The position numbers and the translations under genes are program-made. This document shows positions 10,622-19,341 of a DNA stretch of 64,000 nt, in pieces. The notes beneath the pieces were generated by a model. It saw nothing but the letters and a program-made list of their open reading frames with translations. It was not told the DNA's origin and did not search any database. This stretch comes from Paraphysomonas bandaiensis (Eukaryota > Protista > Chrysophyceae): assembly GCA_965644295.1 (NCBI GenBank), contig CBFFRP010000188.1, positions 1 to 64,000 of the forward strand, in the 5' to 3' direction. How positions within the stretch are numbered: position 1 is the stretch's first letter; the number at the start of each line of letters is the position of its first letter.

Positions 10622-13600
10622 ATGTTACCAGCTAGTGGTAAGGGATGGATAGGGTTACCTGTATGGGTATTTATAGATACAGATGGTATATGGGAGCCTG
10701 GAACTGTTAAAGCAGCATCTCCCTCTAGTAATGACCCGTCTAGCTGGCATATCACTGTAGTCACTCAAGAAAAGAATACTATCAATGTCACATGTAAACA
10801 ATTAAGTAATTATGAGTTCGATAAAGTTCAGCGGCGAGTTATTAATAACAATACCACTTGTAGTGATTTGGCTGCAATGGATACTCAAAATGAACCGGAA
10901 ATGTTAAACTGTCTCTCTACAAGATATGCAAATGGAGATATATACACGAGCACTGGCCCTATTCTTATTGTTCTGAATCCTTTCCAGAAGGTTGCTTTGT
11001 ACACTGATGAAATCATTAAACTGTACATTGAACACGGGGAACAGCACCGCATGAATATCTTACCGCCGCACGTTTATAAAATTGGAGACAGTGCGTACCG
11101 TAAAATGTTTATTGACCCTTATGACCCCGACAAGCGGCAGGACCAAACAGTAGTCATTACGGGCGATTCTGGTGCGGGCAAGACGGAGTGCACGAAACAA
11201 TTGTTGCACTACTTGACTGCTATCTCCACCAGGGTATCCATGAGCCTTGGAATGGAAAGTGTACAAGGGACTGAGATAGAGGACCTGATTATTGCCTCAA
11301 ACCCTATTTCCGAGTCATTTGGGAATGCACGTACACAGCACAACGCGAATTCCTCGCGTTTCGGGCGTTATATTGAGCTGCTGTACTCAGCAGACGGGTA
11401 TCTAGAGGGAGCTCTTCTACGAACTTACCTCCTGGAGGCCAGTCGGGTTACTCACCAAATTCAGGGGGACAGTAATTTTCATGTGTTCTATGAGCTCGCA
11501 GCTGGTCTATCCACCCGCGATAGGACTCAACTCGGATTTACTGCTGTTGACGATTTCCATTACCTCAACACCTCCCGCGTTTCTGATCAGAGTTCTTTAC
11601 ACCTGAAAAACTACACTAATCTCAGAGCAGCAATGACCACGCTCAATATATCTCTAGACACCCAAGAGGAAGTGATTAAAGTTCTTATTAGTATTCTTCA
11701 TTTAGGCAACTTATCTTTCGAAGATAACGAGACGACAGATGGTTCAGTTTCCTGTCATATCGCATCTGATGCGGAAGGTCACGCTGAGCTTGCTTGTCGT
11801 ATGCTTGGGTTTACAGAAGATTCTCTCAAAGATGCTATATTACGCACAGAACTTACTGTCCGTGGAACAACGATAATCAAGCAATACGACAGCAAGAATG
11901 CGGTATGTATGCGAGACCGATTAGCACGCACGCTCTATGTTTCACTCTTCAAGTGGATGATGGTCGAGATCAATGCTGCTCTGTCGCAACAGACGTCAGG
12001 ATATGTTGCTTCCAAAATAGGTGTTCTAGACATATTTGGATTTGAGAGCTATCAGAAGAATTCCTTTGAACAGCTCTGTATTAACTATGCTAATGAAAAA
12101 CTACAGGAACTATTCAACTACACTGTATTTGATAGAGAAAGAGAGGTGTACGAGGCAGAAGGTCTCATGTGGCAATCTGTATCCTATCCGGATAATAGAG
12201 AGCGCATTGATCTATTTGAAAATAAGTCTGTAGGCTTATTTACGATTCTTAATGATGCAATGAAGATCCCAGACTCCAACGATGTAAAATTTGCACATGC
12301 AATTTATGCGAGGAGTGCAGGCCATCCACATTGCTATGCTACGAACGCGATGAAAGCCCGTAACGAGTTTACTGTGCGACACTTTGCCTTCGACGTGACG
12401 TATACCGTTGAAAACATTTTAGAGAAGAATAGGGGCATGAGAGAAATCAATTTTTCTGCAATGTTTGGCACAATGTCTGGTGCGAGCCGAAAATTCAGCA
12501 CGGACAACTTGTCTATTTCCCGACAGCTGTCAGGAGAACTAGATTCGCCGAGTAAAGAAAACGAATCTATAGTCAAAAGAGGTAAATCTACGGCTGGCAT
12601 TCAAATAAAGAAGGACATGTCTATCGAATTACGACGGGCCGCTTCATCTGTTTCGGGGCGGAGGAGCGTAAAAACGTCAGTTGGGAAAAAATCGAAAACC
12701 ATATGCTCAGCTTATGTTGCAGAGATCACGTGCTTAATTAGTAGCATCAACTCCACACGATGCCATTTCATTCGATGCATAAAACCGAATAACGAGGGAA
12801 TTCCTGGGACTTTTGATGCGAAATCTGTTATTCGGCAAGTGCGTACTGGGGGAGTGATTAGTGCAGTGGAAGCGGTTAGATTAGGTATGCCTAACCGCCT
12901 ACCGTACGCCGCCTTCGTGAGCAAGTACCGATCCATTTCTCACACTGTAGGGAAATGTCCCTTGACGAGAAATTTGTTTATCTTATTGGGTCTTCTTCAC
13001 GAAAACTCGGACTTAGGTGTTCTGAAGCGTACAGCGACGGCTCTAGTGGAGGCTGTCCCTATGGCGGGGATGATTCTGAGTTCATTATTTCATGACAACT
13101 CGCTTCTGTGTCCTGCTAACCCGTTCGCACAAATTCAAATAGGTAATTCTGTTGTTCTGATTTCATCTGAGTTTTTTGAGTATATGGAGAGAATTCGCCG
13201 TGCCGGCATTACTCTGATTGCTATTCGACTACAACGTGTATGGAAAGCAAATCGGGCCGTAGACACTGGGAGTTATGTTAACACTGCGGCTCTCACGTCC
13301 CTGTTGTACTTTAGTCACAGTGTGAATCTAAAAGTGAGACGTAATACGTTGGCTGCAATTATGATACAGAGACGTGTACGGACATATCTTGCCCGTATGA
13401 GGTGGATGTTGATGCTAATTCGGTTACGGGCCTTGCAAGCTCATATTCGTGGTTATATAGCGCGATCAGTCTACCAAAAGAAAAAACGCTACAATGCTGC
13501 GGTGAAACTTCAGAGCGCCTATCGTATGTACAGAGATAAGCGAACATTTAAACGTTATGTTTTGTTGGCAATCATTTGTCAGCGTATTGTACGTGGTTGG

Positions 13601-16600
13601 ATTGCCCGGAATGCTGAATACTGGAATGTGAGTGTATTTATCGTATTTTTTTGTCGAAGTTGATTGTGAATGTGCAGCGACGAATGACGATGAGACGCTC
13701 CCCACAGATCGCACTTCAAGAAAAGGTTATAGCTTTGGAAAAAGAAGTTGATTCAATTAAGAGTCACACCAGCGTAAAGCCAAGAAGGGCAAGGTGTAAA
13801 TATGTTATTACAGCAGCCGATTTTGTACCCCTTGTAGAAGGTAGTGGCATCATATTCCCACTCTTATGCAATGTGATACATTTTTTCAGGGGAAGAGTTC
13901 ATCAAGATCTGCAGCAACGGAAAGAGTCGTATGACTCGCGTGTGGTTGAGTGCAGATCGGCGGTATCTTCACTGGGAGCGGAAAACTTTTTCCATGAAGA
14001 AGGCAGAGAAACGCATACGTATGTAATTTACATTACTGCGAACTGTTTAAAGATATATGTTTCAGTTGACCTAGCCACTGTAACACATGTCCAACGAGGC
14101 CAAGGAAGCACTCTGTTCAGGAAATGCGAGTTTATTCAAAACATTGAAGATGTTGTTCCTCGATCGTTCTCGCTCCATTGTCGGGATGGTAGGACTCTCG
14201 ATCTTGTGGCCCCGACAGTGGAGCTATTAGAGAGTTGGGTCACAGCACTACAGTTTCTCGTGGTGGATATATATATTATAAGGTACGTGTTAGTGTTTAC
14301 TACTACATGCCTAAAATGGTTTACTAGGCGAGACTTGTACAATATCTGGGCTCTACTGGTCACAGGTGAAGGAGTTGATGAAGTAATTTGCTGTCTGGAC
14401 GTCCTGCAGCGAACCGTTGATACTACTGTGAAGACCGCACTCGTTCCATTTCATGCTTTTGTGACTTTCTGGTGATAGTTTATTGCGATGTACTGCTCAG
14501 TTTCTTACCTGTTCACAGGATATCTCTCCAATGTAATCGAGTACACGCTGAAGAAGTTGTAGAACATATTATTGCTTGCTTACCTGGTATTGAGAATGCC
14601 AAGTACATGACGTTTCAAGCATTTTTTTGTCTGGTAACTTCCGAAAGAAACGATGGGTACGACCTTCACCGTCAGAATACTGTCTACCAAGACATGACGT
14701 TACCATTATCACTGTATTTTATATCGTGTTCCGACGGCAGTACCATGGGCGCCACATCACTGAAGCAAGTGGACCCCCTTGATCGCTATGTCCGTGACCT
14801 TCGAAATGGAGTCCGTGGGTTGGAGGTCCATTGCTGGGATGGGACTGGAGAGAACAAAGGAATTCCTGTTGTAGCTAATCCGAGTGCCGACCCGCAATGT
14901 TCTATTAGCAGTGAGGCGTTTCCCGAAGTATCGTTTTATGATTTTGTTGCTGCTGTAAAGACGCATGCATTTGTATCGAATCCCTATCCTCTATTCTTGA
15001 TTATTGAGATACACTGTAGTAAAGATATACAATGGAGAATGGCATCGATATTGCGAGATCTCATGACACCTGTTTTACTACATTCGTCTGATTTAATAAT
15101 AGAGAGCCAAGGGTCGGAGCCACGATTACGTTCACCTTCAGAGCTAAAGGGCAAAGTGATATTAGTATTGAGTAATCACAAGAAAAAGTTTTCTGTGGAA
15201 ATACCAGATAAGTCCGCACAGTGTCAAAAACAGGATGTTGGGGTATCAGAGGAAAAGTCTGGGTACGACGATCCGGCATCAAATGAGGATACTACAAGCA
15301 CAACAGGAGTCGATGATGTTGACCTTTTGCTTACTGGTGCTAAGAAAAGTAAATCTGACTCGAAGGTAATTATCGATGAGTGCTTTTATGCCACGTGTGA
15401 ATATTTAATTGGATATGCTCTGTGACAGACGGATCGTAAAGTCGAGGCCTTTTGGAATATGGATGCGAAGTCAAAGTCGACAGGCTCTGTAGATCAGGAC
15501 ACACCGAAAAGTGCTTTCTCCGACCAAGGGGAAAATGATGAAGAAATGGCTGCTCTGGCATGCTTCATTCCTTCACCTGATATATTCCATGATCTTCTTT
15601 CTTTGGCTACATTATTGTCAAGAGGTGTCAATGACTTGGATGCCATGGTGAATTTACCATCAGGAAGGGTGAAAAACAACACTCTTGCGAGTTGCGGTGA
15701 GGTGGACATGCTCTTTCATCTCTCGAGGAATAAGGCGATTCCTTGGATATATCACAATTCAGTGTGCTTAAGGTACGGTAACTTCGTAAATTTATGATTT
15801 GCTGACATTTATATACTTTCAGTCGAGTATACCCCGATGAGCGACTTGAGGAAGCAACTATGTTGGATCCGGCCCGTGCATGGGCTAGTGGTCAGCAATT
15901 AGTGTCCGTGGACATGCACAGCTGCTCCAACGAGGAGGCCATTCATACGGCACATGTTGTGCGTGGAAAGTTCATGGACAACGGAGGGTGTGGATATGTC
16001 TTGAAGCCACGTTACATGCATAGTCGGGGGCTAAAGCCTTTTCCCAAAGCACATTTATCTGTGCATGTGTTAAGTGCACAAAACCTCCCACCTTATCGCA
16101 AAAGTACAGTTGGAGTGATACAATCTCAAGATTCAAATGTACGTATTATATTTATATTGGTTTTCATCATCGCTTACAATATCCGTATTTGGATTTTAGG
16201 AATTAATGGAAAAGTTCCTAGATCCTTACGTCGTGATGGAGATATGGGGACTTGCACAAGACAAGTACACGTATAGCACAATAACCAGTGGAGGTAGTGG
16301 TCGCACAGATAACCCTATTTGGGATGAGGTGTGTTGCTTCAATCATTATTTGTTTGATGTCCGTAACAAATTGGTACTGTATAGGTGTTTGGACATAATT
16401 TGGATTGCCCAGATTTAGCTCATCTAACCTTTCGCGTCTTTGTTGGTGACTGTGTGCTTGGTATTGCATCTGTTCCCCTTACTTGTCTTAAACAAGGGCT
16501 GCATTGCCTGAATCTGTTTGATGAAAACGGGTATCGAATCCCTCACTCTACTCTGACAATTCGAAGCATGTTGTGCGAGCTAGACAATGCTTACAAATCA

Positions 16601-16690
16601 CTTTATTTTCCTTCACCTGATTCATCGGTGCTATCAGAGGAAGATTGTATTGACGACCTGGAACTTGAGCAAAAGCTTAGATCTAAATGA
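10622..16690 (+). CDS. Myosin (motor + 5 IQ) fused to a PLC-delta-like PH/EF/X/Y/C2 module; 10 exons, ~1866 aa
   Basis: Motor: GDSGAGKT, NANSSRFG, DIFGFE, FEQLCINYANEKLQ, HFIRCIKPN. PH: RSFSL...TLDLVAP...WV. X: VYQDMTLPLSLYFIS, CWDG, AFVSNPYPL, SPSELKGK. Y: LSRVYP, GKFMDNGGCGYVLKP. C2: VLSAQNLP, DPYV, NPIWDE. Introns at 13628-13677, 13841-13889, 14019-14065, 14283-14327, 14472-14518, 15366-15428, 15773-15822, 16139-16199 and 16329-16384 all preserve frame. Confidence 0.88.
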
Positions 16691-19341
16691 ATACTCTCGT
16701 ATAAAACTCCGAAGACAGTATTCGCTGCTCTCGGAATTGGACGTTCTACTCGGAAATAGATATCGGGTAAATATGAAGAAGTATTTCTAAGCGACGATGG
16801 GATGGTTGTTTACTAAAGGATCACATTACAGTAATAAATAAATTTGATGGGCTAATAGCAGAGGTATAATGGATCTGGAATATAGTTAGTCACTAGGGTT
16901 AGATAAATATTGACTGAAAGTTGTAATTTTTCTTAGGACAGAGCCAATGAAAGAATAGCAGTTTACGTCTATGAATTCGATGACTTAGAACACAGTGACT
17001 TGATGTACGCCATCAAACGACGCCATTTATTAGTACAGTATACTATCCTTCAGGCTATCTATCTCAAAAGGAGCGGAATCATTATTTTTATCTAAATTAT
17101 ATGTGTGCTTGTCACATAATACAACCAGCCAACTCCTACGTGCGTACTTGAATCTTGTTCAAGCCTATCGCTAGTAGCTATCCTGTGTTCTATGTAGCGA
17201 TGAAATACAGAATATACATGACTACAATATAAAAGTAGCTGTAAAAAGTATACAAAGAAACTGAAAATATAGTAGCTATTATTAAAGATACGATTTGTAC
17301 AACAGAATGTTCGTGTTGGTGATTGATGTGTTTCCTCAATCATAGTGCTACAACATCATAATTTCACTTTATCTCTCTTAACGTAGTTCAGTCGGTTCTG
17401 TGCTACTACAAGTATTATTTAATAGTTTGTTGAGTTTTGTTTATAAAAAGCTGCAGTTAATTAAAGGTTGCGGATAATAGCAGTTAATTGAAGAATATGG
17501 TATTTAGAGACAGTATTATATGAACTCAGAACTCAATGATGTGATGAGCTAAACTGGAATATATGACTATATAAGACTGCTTCTAACTAAGACTGTTGAC
17601 TTTTGATTATGTGCAAGCAATTGAAAGCTGTATTCTAAGACTTATAAAATTTTAGCCGATAATAAAATGATACAATACTGGTGGAAACAGTACCATATGA
17701 AATTCATCCCCATTTTTTTGACCTGAATTGCGTTCAACACAACGCTCATATATATGAACACCAAAAAATATTGACATTCAACTTCAGTATTCGGTTTTGA
17801 AAATAAATTACCTTTTATTGCTTATGGTATTGTTGACAGTAATGTATACTGACTTTATCGTTATGCTACACTGTTGACCGCGATAACGTCGATTCAAGTG
17901 ATCTCATTTCTAATCCAGGAATTCGCAACAACAATATGTCCAGCATTTTACTGGAGAGTTCAAATTCCAAAGCCGATGCTGAATGTGCTTAGAAGCAGTG
18001 ATACTCCTTCCTTTCAGGGTTTGGGTCATGTCGTGTTTCTCAGGATTGCATCGACAAGTTCATTTTTTTGATGTGCCTCATATAAGATTCCCTAAATACC
18101 CTTCTGCGAAATAGGGATACAATTTTTGTAGCTATTGTTTTGATATAGTTTAACACATTTGCCACTCACTATTATGCAGATACAATTGATTTGAAACAAT
18201 AATTGCTTTTTTTATTTGTATACTTAATATTAATCAGAGAATAGCTATTTCCTTCAAGGAAATTATCAGCAAGCTACAGACATATTATACGCATTAAATA
18301 GTAGGTATTCAACATCATGAGGATGACCCATAATTTAACCTGGAGAAGGAGTATTTTCAGCGGAATGATAAGATTCCTTATTACACATGGTGAATATAGC
18401 TACAATAATATGCTATGAGATAGACAAACTGTATCAACTTTTGACATATTTGGATGAATTCACCTAAATAACTGAATGTTGAAATCACTTAATAATCTCA
18501 TAGTTACTCTCAACATCTCCTATTATTTGATAGATATTCGCTACATTTATATTCTCATTCGCTGTGCTACCAATCAATATTTAAGATATTTAAGTTTTTC
18601 TGACATAATTCATATTATATCATTGTTTCATGTTTTACAGTAGTCAACTACTGTATTCTTAAACTAACTGTCATAACTCGAATACCCTAAAATACAGCTT
18701 TGGTAATTGCTTACACTTAAAATCAGAACTCAATACCTGATATGTTATATTGACTGAAAAAGCTCGTGCCTATATATTATCTAAGATCTGATAATATTGA
18801 TTGGTAGTAGAAAAAATATAAAAGTAGCGAATGACAATAAATGAGATATTGATCACAATTTTTAATTATTATGATTATTGAGTGAGTTTTCTGTTCAGTT
18901 AAGTATCTTTCTGTTACATTAACAAATTATAGGTGTCATTCATCTCTTGAAACTTAAGTGCAAAGAATATATTCAGAAAACGGGACAACATGTAGAGCCA
19001 CAGGAGCTTCAAATGTAGCTTTCCAGCTGGATAGACGACAGACTATATATCGCACATTACACTATAGCTGTACAACAACCTACCCTGTTGAGAGGAATAC
19101 ATGAACATGAATAATCCACTACAAGGCCATAACAGTCACACAGACCACTCTAGCTGTACTGGCAGTTCAAAAGTAGAGCAAAATAAAATGAGTATAATAT
19201 TACAGATATATCTTATTATGCAGACTCGTATAATACATATCTCTACCAATAACAGTGCAACATACATATACATAATACAGACACCGAACTCATGCTGTTC
19301 GACCTCTTGACGCAACATTTTACACAACACACCGAGAAAAA

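What the first reader, a model, noticed from the sequence alone, without database searches (positions are those of the whole stretch)
10622..16690. Myosin motor fused to an entire phospholipase-C-delta-like module (PH-EF-X-Y-C2)
Seen in sequence: the myosin ORF does not end at 13663. A 50-nt GTGAGT...TGCAG intron (13628-13677, phase 0) joins YWN to RRMTMRR, and eight more GT-AG introns of 45-63 nt keep frame to TGA 16690 (6069-468 = 5601 nt, 1866 aa). The ORFs overlap with no intergenic room for a second promoter. The splices restore motifs that are split across exons (EG|EEFIK, RI|LDL, LS|RVYP). Established knowledge: PH-EF-X-Y-C2 is the PLC-delta architecture, and myosin-enzyme fusions are known (chitin synthase, kinase, RhoGAP). 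I do not recall a described myosin-PI-PLC fusion, and oomycetes such as Phytophthora lack canonical PI-PLC. Inference: an actin motor whose tail reads phosphoinositide membranes and Ca2+, e.g. for phagosome or vesicle transport.
Basis: partly seen in the sequence, partly recalled or inferred. Interest (0 to 1): 0.93.

Follow-up and report, generated by a model that had tools for sequence, protein, structure and literature searches.

The report
Myosin with dead phospholipase-C tail
One expressed gene of a marine, non-photosynthetic protist joins an intact myosin motor to a whole phospholipase-C-delta-like module that has lost its catalytic residues; it belongs to a small gene family that I could not find described.

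Summary
All nine splices, including the key 13627/13678 joint, stand in RNA-type contigs of three studies and are absent from a DNA run. One 5772-nt contig runs from the motor to a poly(A) tail at 16855.

Searched exon by exon, Pfam gives Myosin_head, four IQ motifs, PI-PLC-X and PI-PLC-Y above cut-off. PH and C2 are only weak matches.

The gene is not unique:
- Three diverged paralogues in the same genome have the same layout (C255, C84, C218).
- Six unnamed environmental proteins carry motor plus PLC, one as a single 2045-codon ORF.
- Earlier scan notes reported such fusions on other pieces of this genome.

The PLC part is not a canonical enzyme. Rat PLC-delta1 H311, N312, D343 and H356 are D, G, H and N here. 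The genome's two stand-alone PLCs and 47 of 48 canonical representatives keep all four.

The degenerate modules group together in the X-domain tree. The motors do not form one group (AU p 5e-5).

Most likely this is an actin motor with a non-catalytic, PRIP-like membrane-binding tail. I rate it a new variant of a known kind, of moderate to high interest.

The parts
10622..13627 (+). Exon 1 (1002 codons): N-terminal region, myosin motor (about 10862-12946) and a neck with four IQ motifs (about 13229-13576)
   Evidence: Pfam Myosin_head 1.4e-173 over residues 81-775 and IQ x4. P-loop GDSGAGKT at 181, switch I NANSSRFG at 241, switch II DIFGFE at 470, and IQ cores at 870, 915, 938 and 963.
13628..13677 (+). 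Intron 1 (50 nt, GTGAGT..CAG, phase 0). Its removal takes out the stop at 13661-13663 and joins motor to tail.
   Evidence: Joint 13627/13678 in X1, X4 and X5, absent in DNA run X18.
13678..14282 (+). Exons 2-4 with introns 2 (13841-13889) and 3 (14019-14065): short helical linker, then a PLC-delta-type PH domain
   Evidence: PH_12 0.0025 and PH 0.0046 on exon 4. Both joints seen in RNA contigs. Collinear PH matches in paralogues and environmental loci.
14283..14327 (+). Intron 4 (45 nt). It is in frame and free of stops, so retaining it would add 15 codons.
   Evidence: Frame map. Spliced out in X1, X4 and X5.
14328..14693 (+). Exon 5, intron 5 (14472-14518) and the start of exon 6: the region where PLC-delta has its EF-hands. 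No EF-hand family is detected here.
   Evidence: No Pfam hit. Only its last part aligns to the stretch upstream of X in canonical PLCs.
14694..15164 (+). PI-PLC-X half-barrel with a degenerate active site (D, G, E, H, N, E at delta1 positions 311, 312, 341, 343, 356, 390)
   Evidence: PF00388 5.3e-23. Alignment to rat PLC-delta1. Residue table.
15165..15587 (+). X-Y linker, acidic and serine/threonine-rich, spanning intron 6 (15366-15428)
   Evidence: No family match. Joint seen in RNA contigs.
15588..16012 (+). PI-PLC-Y half-barrel spanning intron 7 (15773-15822). It keeps the SRVYP motif (delta1 R549, Y551) and NGGCGYVLKP.
   Evidence: PF00387 1.7e-10 on exon 8. PDB alignment. The conserved part starts at model residue 1556.
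16013..16690 (+). C2-like domain and C-terminal tail, with introns 8 (16139-16199) and 9 (16329-16384); stop TGA at 16688-16690
   Evidence: C2 0.025 on exon 9. The only PDB matches of exon 10 are the PLC-delta1 C2 end, E 0.14. Joints in RNA contigs.
16691..16855 (+). 3' untranslated region up to the poly(A) addition site
   Evidence: 24 loose A's behind 16855 in the X1 contig (table 7).

Best explanation
This is one protein-coding gene, transcribed as one spliced, polyadenylated mRNA. It encodes an unconventional myosin of 1866 residues. The motor keeps its nucleotide-binding and switch motifs, so it should hydrolyse ATP and move on actin. Four IQ motifs form a light-chain-binding lever. The tail is a complete PLC-delta-like module (PH, EF-position region, X/Y barrel, C2). 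That module has lost both catalytic histidines and half of the catalytic Ca2+ ligands, yet remains under purifying selection. I infer that the tail acts as a non-catalytic membrane or inositol-phosphate binding unit, as in animal PRIP/PLCL proteins. It would tether the motor to phosphoinositide-bearing membranes such as the plasma membrane, phagosomes or vesicles. Shown here: the fusion, the splicing, the expression, the domain order, the loss of catalytic residues, and the family's presence in paralogues and other organisms. Inferred: lipid binding, lack of enzyme activity, and the cellular role.
For: The frame and splice model hold. All nine joints stand in RNA-type contigs from three studies and not in DNA. 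One 5772-nt contig runs from the motor to poly(A). Domains were found exon by exon. Motor motifs are intact. The active-site residues are D, G, E, H, N, E against H, N, E, D, H, E in rat PLC-delta1 and in 47 of 48 canonical representatives plus this genome's C308 and C331 PLCs. Three paralogues have the same collinear layout. Six environmental proteins combine Myosin_head with PI-PLC-X. P0151 (2045 codons) and P0154 (1901 codons) are single uninterrupted ORFs. The replacement residues are themselves conserved within subgroups: D at 311, and H or R at 343. Between strains, 12 of 16 coding differences are synonymous, 6 of 7 in the tail. All 16 degenerate modules lie on one side of a branch in the X-domain tree, SH-aLRT 96.7. 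An animal 'inactive phospholipase C-like protein 1' is among the few named relatives of a fusion tail.
Against: No lipid-binding or enzyme assay exists. The PH, C2 and EF assignments rest on weak or absent profile matches in this gene. By ungapped extension of the alignment, delta1 K438 and K440 (phosphate contacts) are V and S here, so headgroup binding by the barrel may be weakened. Logan contigs cannot prove a single molecule or rule out an extra internal start. The X1 contig ends about 18 nt short of the proposed ATG. The grouping of degenerate modules in the tree could be partly long-branch attraction.
Confidence: 0.72

Rival explanations
1. The tail is still an enzyme with a rewired active site. 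His and Asp have swapped places (H311 to D, D343 to H), and this swap is conserved in the subgroup, so the motor might deliver a phosphodiesterase or related lipid-modifying activity.
For: The D-at-311 and H-at-343 pair recurs in this gene and in P0001-P0007. E341 and E390 are kept, and so is the R549/Y551 motif. The barrel is under purifying selection.
Against: H356 is also lost (N, S or Y), N312 is lost, and K438/K440 appear lost. The other subgroup has R at 343 and further decay. I know of no precedent for an active PI-PLC without both histidines; that is my own knowledge, not a test made here.
Confidence: 0.1
2. There are two functional products. Besides the fusion mRNA, an internal promoter or alternative processing yields a stand-alone PLC-like protein or a tail-less myosin, and the fusion is a minor read-through form.
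For: In the metatranscriptome X5, the contigs over the tail have higher word depth than those over the motor (57 against 7-10). The 45-nt intron 4 could be retained in frame.
Against: Contig depth is not a measure of expression, and poly(A) libraries favour 3' ends (tool caveat). There is no intergenic space. Unspliced, the myosin frame stops inside intron 1, and no unspliced RNA contig was seen. Relatives encode motor and PLC in one ORF.
Confidence: 0.12
3. The join is an artefact: a misassembly or a chimeric contig brought two neighbouring genes together.
For: Contigs across two genes do not by themselves prove a single transcript (tool caveat).
Against: A DNA contig of 8554 nt covers the whole stretch colinearly. 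The splice joint keeps the frame. Three studies and two organism labels show it. Four paralogues and six environmental proteins repeat the layout.
Confidence: 0.02

Closest known systems
PRIP / PLCL1-PLCL2 (animal 'inactive phospholipase C-like proteins')
   Same: Both have the PLC-delta layout (PH, EF region, X, Y, C2) with catalytic residues replaced, and both are kept as a binding module rather than an enzyme. A PLCL1 is among the few named relatives of a fusion tail.
   Different: PRIPs have no motor and are animal genes. Here the module is the tail of a myosin, and its replacements (D311, H or R at 343) arose separately in a protist lineage. Orthology was not tested and is unlikely.
PLC-delta1 (rat, PDB 1DJX and 1QAS families)
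   Same: It is the best solved-structure match for the X (3e-19), Y and C2 exons. The domain order is the same, and conserved motifs such as CWDG, SR[IV]YP and NGGCGYVLKP are shared.
   Different: H311, N312, D343 and H356 are not kept. No EF-hand match was found. The module is fused behind a motor and IQ neck.
Unconventional myosins with lipid-binding or enzyme-type tails (myosin I TH1, myosin X PH domains, myosin III kinase, myosin IX RhoGAP, myosin XVII chitin synthase)
   Same: They follow the same principle: a conserved motor and IQ neck carry a tail that sets the cargo or membrane target. This is from general knowledge. Classes III, V, VII, IX and XI were present as outgroups in the tree.
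   Different: None of these tails is a PLC module. This motor does not group with those classes but with unnamed environmental myosins, some of which have PX tails.
Environmental proteins P0151-P0156 and in-genome paralogues at C84, C218 and C255
   Same: They share the motor-IQ-PH-X-Y(-C2) order and a degenerate active site.
   Different: Motor identity to this gene is only 22-28%. Their motors form a separate long-branched clade, and one clade of all PLC-tailed motors is rejected. The tails closest to this gene are the short fragments P0001-P0007, at 34-41%.

Membership tests
Myosin superfamily | Myosin_head domain above the Pfam gathering score | tested here: met
   579 bits against a cut-off of 33.3, residues 81-775.
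Myosin superfamily | ATPase motifs: P-loop, switch I, switch II | tested here: met
   GDSGAGKT, NANSSRFG and DIFGFE are present. D replaces the usual E in the P-loop.
Myosin superfamily | IQ neck after the converter | tested here: met
   Four IQ stretches, 43 bits against a cut-off of 20.3.
A named myosin class (I, III, V, VII, IX, XI, oomycete PDZ or FYVE-ankyrin types) | Motor groups with that class in a tree | tested here: not met
   The motor groups with P0295 and the unnamed P0271-P0301 set, apart from the named classes sampled. No formal class assignment against CyMoBase was possible.
Eukaryotic PI-PLC (EC 3.1.4.11), delta type | X and Y barrel halves above Pfam cut-offs, in that order | tested here: met
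   PI-PLC-X 81.7 bits (cut-off 23.1) and PI-PLC-Y 41.6 bits (cut-off 28.8).
Eukaryotic PI-PLC (EC 3.1.4.11), delta type | Catalytic histidines H311 and H356 (rat delta1 numbering) | tested here: not met
   They are D and N here. 47 of 48 canonical representatives keep both.
Eukaryotic PI-PLC (EC 3.1.4.11), delta type | Catalytic Ca2+ ligands N312, E341, D343, E390 | tested here: not met
   They are G, E, H, E: two of four are kept.
Eukaryotic PI-PLC (EC 3.1.4.11), delta type | N-terminal PH domain | tested here: inconclusive
   Below the cut-off in this gene (18.7 bits against 27). The homologous position scores 24-32 bits in P0151, P0154, P0155 and P0003.
Eukaryotic PI-PLC (EC 3.1.4.11), delta type | EF-hand lobes between PH and X | tested here: inconclusive
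   No EF-hand family hit in exons 5-6. There is a weak EF-hand_7 hit in paralogue C218.
Eukaryotic PI-PLC (EC 3.1.4.11), delta type | C-terminal C2 domain | tested here: inconclusive
   C2 15.2 bits against a cut-off of 22 on exon 9. Exon 10 matches only the PLC-delta1 C2 end, at E 0.14. Relative P0153 has C2 over the cut-off.
PRIP / PLCL inactive PLC-like proteins | PLC-delta layout with inactivating active-site replacements | tested here: met
   This shows likeness in how it works, not shared descent.
PRIP / PLCL inactive PLC-like proteins | Orthology to animal PLCL1/2 | not tested
   No PLCL sequence was placed in the X-domain tree. The only link is a 24% identity hit to a fusion tail.

The most novel reading that the evidence does not exclude
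The reciprocal His/Asp exchange at positions 311 and 343, conserved across the subgroup, marks a rewired and still active catalytic centre. If so, this is a motor that carries a lipid-cleaving or lipid-modifying enzyme along actin to its membrane substrate. The module would also have been moved between unrelated motor lineages as a cassette.
Probability: 0.1. Interest if true: 0.85.

Novelty: new variant of a known kind. Interest (0 to 1): 0.62.

Why it matters
Myosin tails decide what a motor carries. A complete PLC-delta scaffold used as a tail would be a new way to couple actin-based force to phosphoinositide membranes. It would also be a natural case of an enzyme fold re-used as a binding module outside animals.

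The family offers a testable case of tail exchange between motor lineages. It has four paralogues in this genome and is found in marine and other environmental data, and its tail and motor histories conflict.

It also fills a gap in myosin catalogues, which state that dozens of stramenopile orphan myosins remain unclassified (PMC5583752).

Tried and rejected
- **Joined protein.** The joined (spliced) protein was not sent to any search tool; all database searches were made exon by exon by reference. The joined model was built only inside scripts, for the frame check, local tblastn against fetched loci and codon classing.
- **Direct orthologue search.** A search for full-length orthologues of this gene was not possible. 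Exon 1 (1002 aa) limits candidates to 1753 aa or less, so fusions of about 1866 aa were out of range.
- **Closest motor relatives.** P0271 has a 640-aa downstream ORF with no PLC likeness. The contig of P0295, the sister of this motor, ends 560 nt after the motor, so it is uninformative.
- **Closest tail fragments.** The contigs of P0001, P0002, P0003, P0006 and P0007 are 4.3 kb or shorter. Only L016 shows weak IQ motifs upstream of PH-X.
- **AU test.** The test on the full 75-row motor set with the mixture model did not finish. A 31-row set under LG+G4 was used instead.
- **Organism.** It was not identified. The SSU rRNA search of the genome failed, and a paper search by assembly statistics gave nothing. 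There are no light-harvesting genes, and the best named motor hits are stramenopiles.
- **Literature.** An Emiliania huxleyi paper lists Myosin_head and PI-PLC-X among enriched domains but describes no fusion.
Full report
**Observation.** Ten exons between 10622 and 16690 are separated by nine GT..AG introns of 50, 49, 47, 45, 47, 63, 50, 61 and 56 nt. They give 5601 nt, 1866 codons and a single terminal TGA. The myosin ORF read without splicing stops at 13663, inside intron 1, and overlaps the next ORF, 13651-14475.

**RNA evidence.** Runs that hold the stretch include poly(A) marine metatranscriptomes and runs under three organism labels. I laid 10950-16900 on four runs.
- All nine joints appear in X1, X4 and X5, which come from three studies. 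None appears in the DNA run X18, which covers the stretch unspliced in one 8554-nt record.
- The key joint 13627/13678 has 161, 161 and 74 letters on its shorter side.
- A single X1 contig of 5772 nt runs from about 10640 to 16855 and ends in 24 A's. This marks the poly(A) site and a 165-nt 3' UTR.
- These are assembled contigs, so they cannot exclude additional internal starts. No unspliced or separately ending RNA form was seen.

**Domains.** I searched exon by exon by reference. The joined protein was never sent to a search tool and was built only in scripts. Pfam gives:

| Domain | E-value | Where |
|---|---|---|
| Myosin_head | 1.4e-173 | exon 1 |
| IQ (four motifs) | 1.5e-11 | exon 1 |
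| PI-PLC-X | 5.3e-23 | exon 6 |
| PI-PLC-Y | 1.7e-10 | exon 8 |
| PH (weak) | 0.0025 | exon 4 |
| C2 (weak) | 0.025 | exon 9 |
| EF-hand | no match | - |

The motor keeps its P-loop, switch I and switch II. Rat PLC-delta1 is the best solved relative of the X, Y and C2 exons.

**The PLC module is degenerate.** The alignment to PLC-delta1 and a profile alignment of 66 X domains show the following.
- Delta1 H311, N312, E341, D343, H356 and E390 read D, G, E, H, N, E in this gene.
- 47 of 48 canonical representatives keep all six residues. So do this genome's two stand-alone PLCs, at C308 and C331.
- R549 and Y551 (SRVYP) and the NGGCGYVLKP motif are kept.
- By ungapped extension of the alignment, K438 and K440 are V and S. 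This is tentative.
- In the weak C2 alignment, one of two loop aspartates (D706) is V.

So neither catalysis nor Ca2+ sensing is supported. The module is nevertheless conserved. Of 16 coding differences between strains, 12 are synonymous, and 6 of 7 in the tail are. The replacement residues also recur in relatives.

**A family, not a singleton.** The genome (62.6 Mb, 669 contigs) has roughly 45 myosin loci and six PI-PLC-X loci.
- Four X loci lie just downstream of a myosin head on the same strand: this one, C255, C84 and C218.
- Local tblastn shows collinear motor, PH, X, Y and C2 at all three other loci, with 23-28% motor identity. Pfam on their ORF pieces agrees.
- A database search with the long C84 exon found six environmental proteins, P0151-P0156, from ENA or JGI. 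They are unnamed, 'hypothetical' or 'myosin-5', and carry Myosin_head plus PI-PLC-X, mostly with Y and PH or C2.
- P0151 is one uninterrupted 2045-codon ORF on a 23-kb contig. P0154 is one 1901-codon ORF. In relatives, therefore, the fusion needs no splice model.
- A tail-directed search returned only these fusions. The next named hits were PLC-eta-2 and an 'inactive phospholipase C-like protein 1'.
- The closest relatives of this gene's X exon (P0001-P0007, 34-41%) sit on short contigs. One of them, L016, has weak IQ motifs just upstream of PH-X.

**History.**
- In the X-domain tree, all 16 degenerate modules lie on one side of a branch, SH-aLRT 96.7. They fall into three subgroups: this gene with P0001-P0006; C255; and C84, C218 and P0151-P0156.
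- In the motor tree, this gene sits with P0295 and a set of unnamed environmental myosins. Some of these have PX tails, and one (P0271) has a non-PLC downstream ORF. C84, C218, P0151, P0152 and P0154 form a separate long clade.
- Holding all seven PLC-tailed motors together is rejected on a reduced set (delta lnL 45.9, p-AU 5e-5, LG+G4).
- This pattern fits either exchange of the tail cassette between motor lineages or an old fusion followed by tail replacement in many descendants. Long branches (C255 and clade B) make both trees uncertain.

**Organism.** It is unknown. It is marine by the runs that hold it. It has no light-harvesting protein genes. Its best named motor relatives are oomycetes, brown algae, diatoms and Ochromonas. 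A heterotrophic stramenopile is therefore a reasonable guess, not a result.

**Mechanism (inferred).** The protein is an ATP-driven actin motor with a four-IQ lever. It has a short helical linker of about 25 residues, which gives little evidence for dimerisation. Its tail uses the PLC-delta scaffold as a binding device: the PH domain, and perhaps the crippled barrel and C2, hold the motor on phosphoinositide membranes. This parallels PRIP/PLCL proteins and, in function, the lipid-binding tails of myosin I and myosin X. A rewired enzyme, suggested by the conserved His/Asp exchange at 311/343, is not excluded but is unlikely without H356.

**Novelty.** Neither pan-eukaryotic myosin catalogue mentions a PLC domain in its main text or in the supplements held: PMC3942036 and PMC5583752. 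Targeted searches found no description. The library is incomplete, so this is absence of evidence only. Proteins with this layout already sit unannotated in public metagenome gene sets. Earlier notes of this scan flagged the same fusion on this stretch and on three other pieces of the genome, and flagged the dead active site. I rate it a new variant of a known kind, an unconventional myosin with a novel tail.

Noticed in passing
G000: C255:169500-179499 (L009, - strand), C84:2500-12499 (L010, +), C218:152500-162499 (L011, -): Three further myosin-PLC fusion loci in the same genome have collinear motor, PH, X, Y and C2. C84 and C218 are close to each other and carry the motor, IQ and part of the tail in single ORFs of 1560 and 1334 codons.
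   Followed up: partly
G000, whole genome: The myosin repertoire is very large: 101 exon-level Myosin_head matches at roughly 45 loci in a 62.6-Mb genome. Open frames of up to 5288 codons adjoin a motor (C400).
   Followed up: no
window 14283-14327: Intron 4 is 45 nt, in frame and free of stops, so retaining it would insert 15 residues at the end of the PH domain. All three RNA-type runs show it spliced out.
   Followed up: partly
L014 (ENA contig, 4286-7480 on - and 8001-11114 on +): In an environmental relative, two myosin genes of the clade nearest this motor lie head to head about 520 nt apart. The one queried is followed by a 640-codon ORF with no family match.
   Followed up: no
P0004 (1121 aa) and P0008 (1867 aa): These canonical PLC representatives each carry two full sets of X, Y and C2 domains. 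They are either tandem PLC duplications in one protein or merged gene calls.
   Followed up: no
P0009 (609 aa): This is a second, unrelated case of a degenerate PLC-X (H, K, E, I, V, D at the six sites). It groups with canonical PLCs, not with the myosin-linked modules.
   Followed up: no
window 16344 and 14481, 15371, 15419: Strain differences that fall in introns are a 3-nt insertion (ATT) in intron 9 and three substitutions. They were seen only in the DNA run X18, as expected if the RNA contigs lack these introns.
   Followed up: yes
window 9582-10067 (- strand): A 161-codon ORF lies on the opposite strand 554 nt upstream of the myosin start, so the two genes may share a divergent promoter region. 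It was not examined.
   Followed up: no
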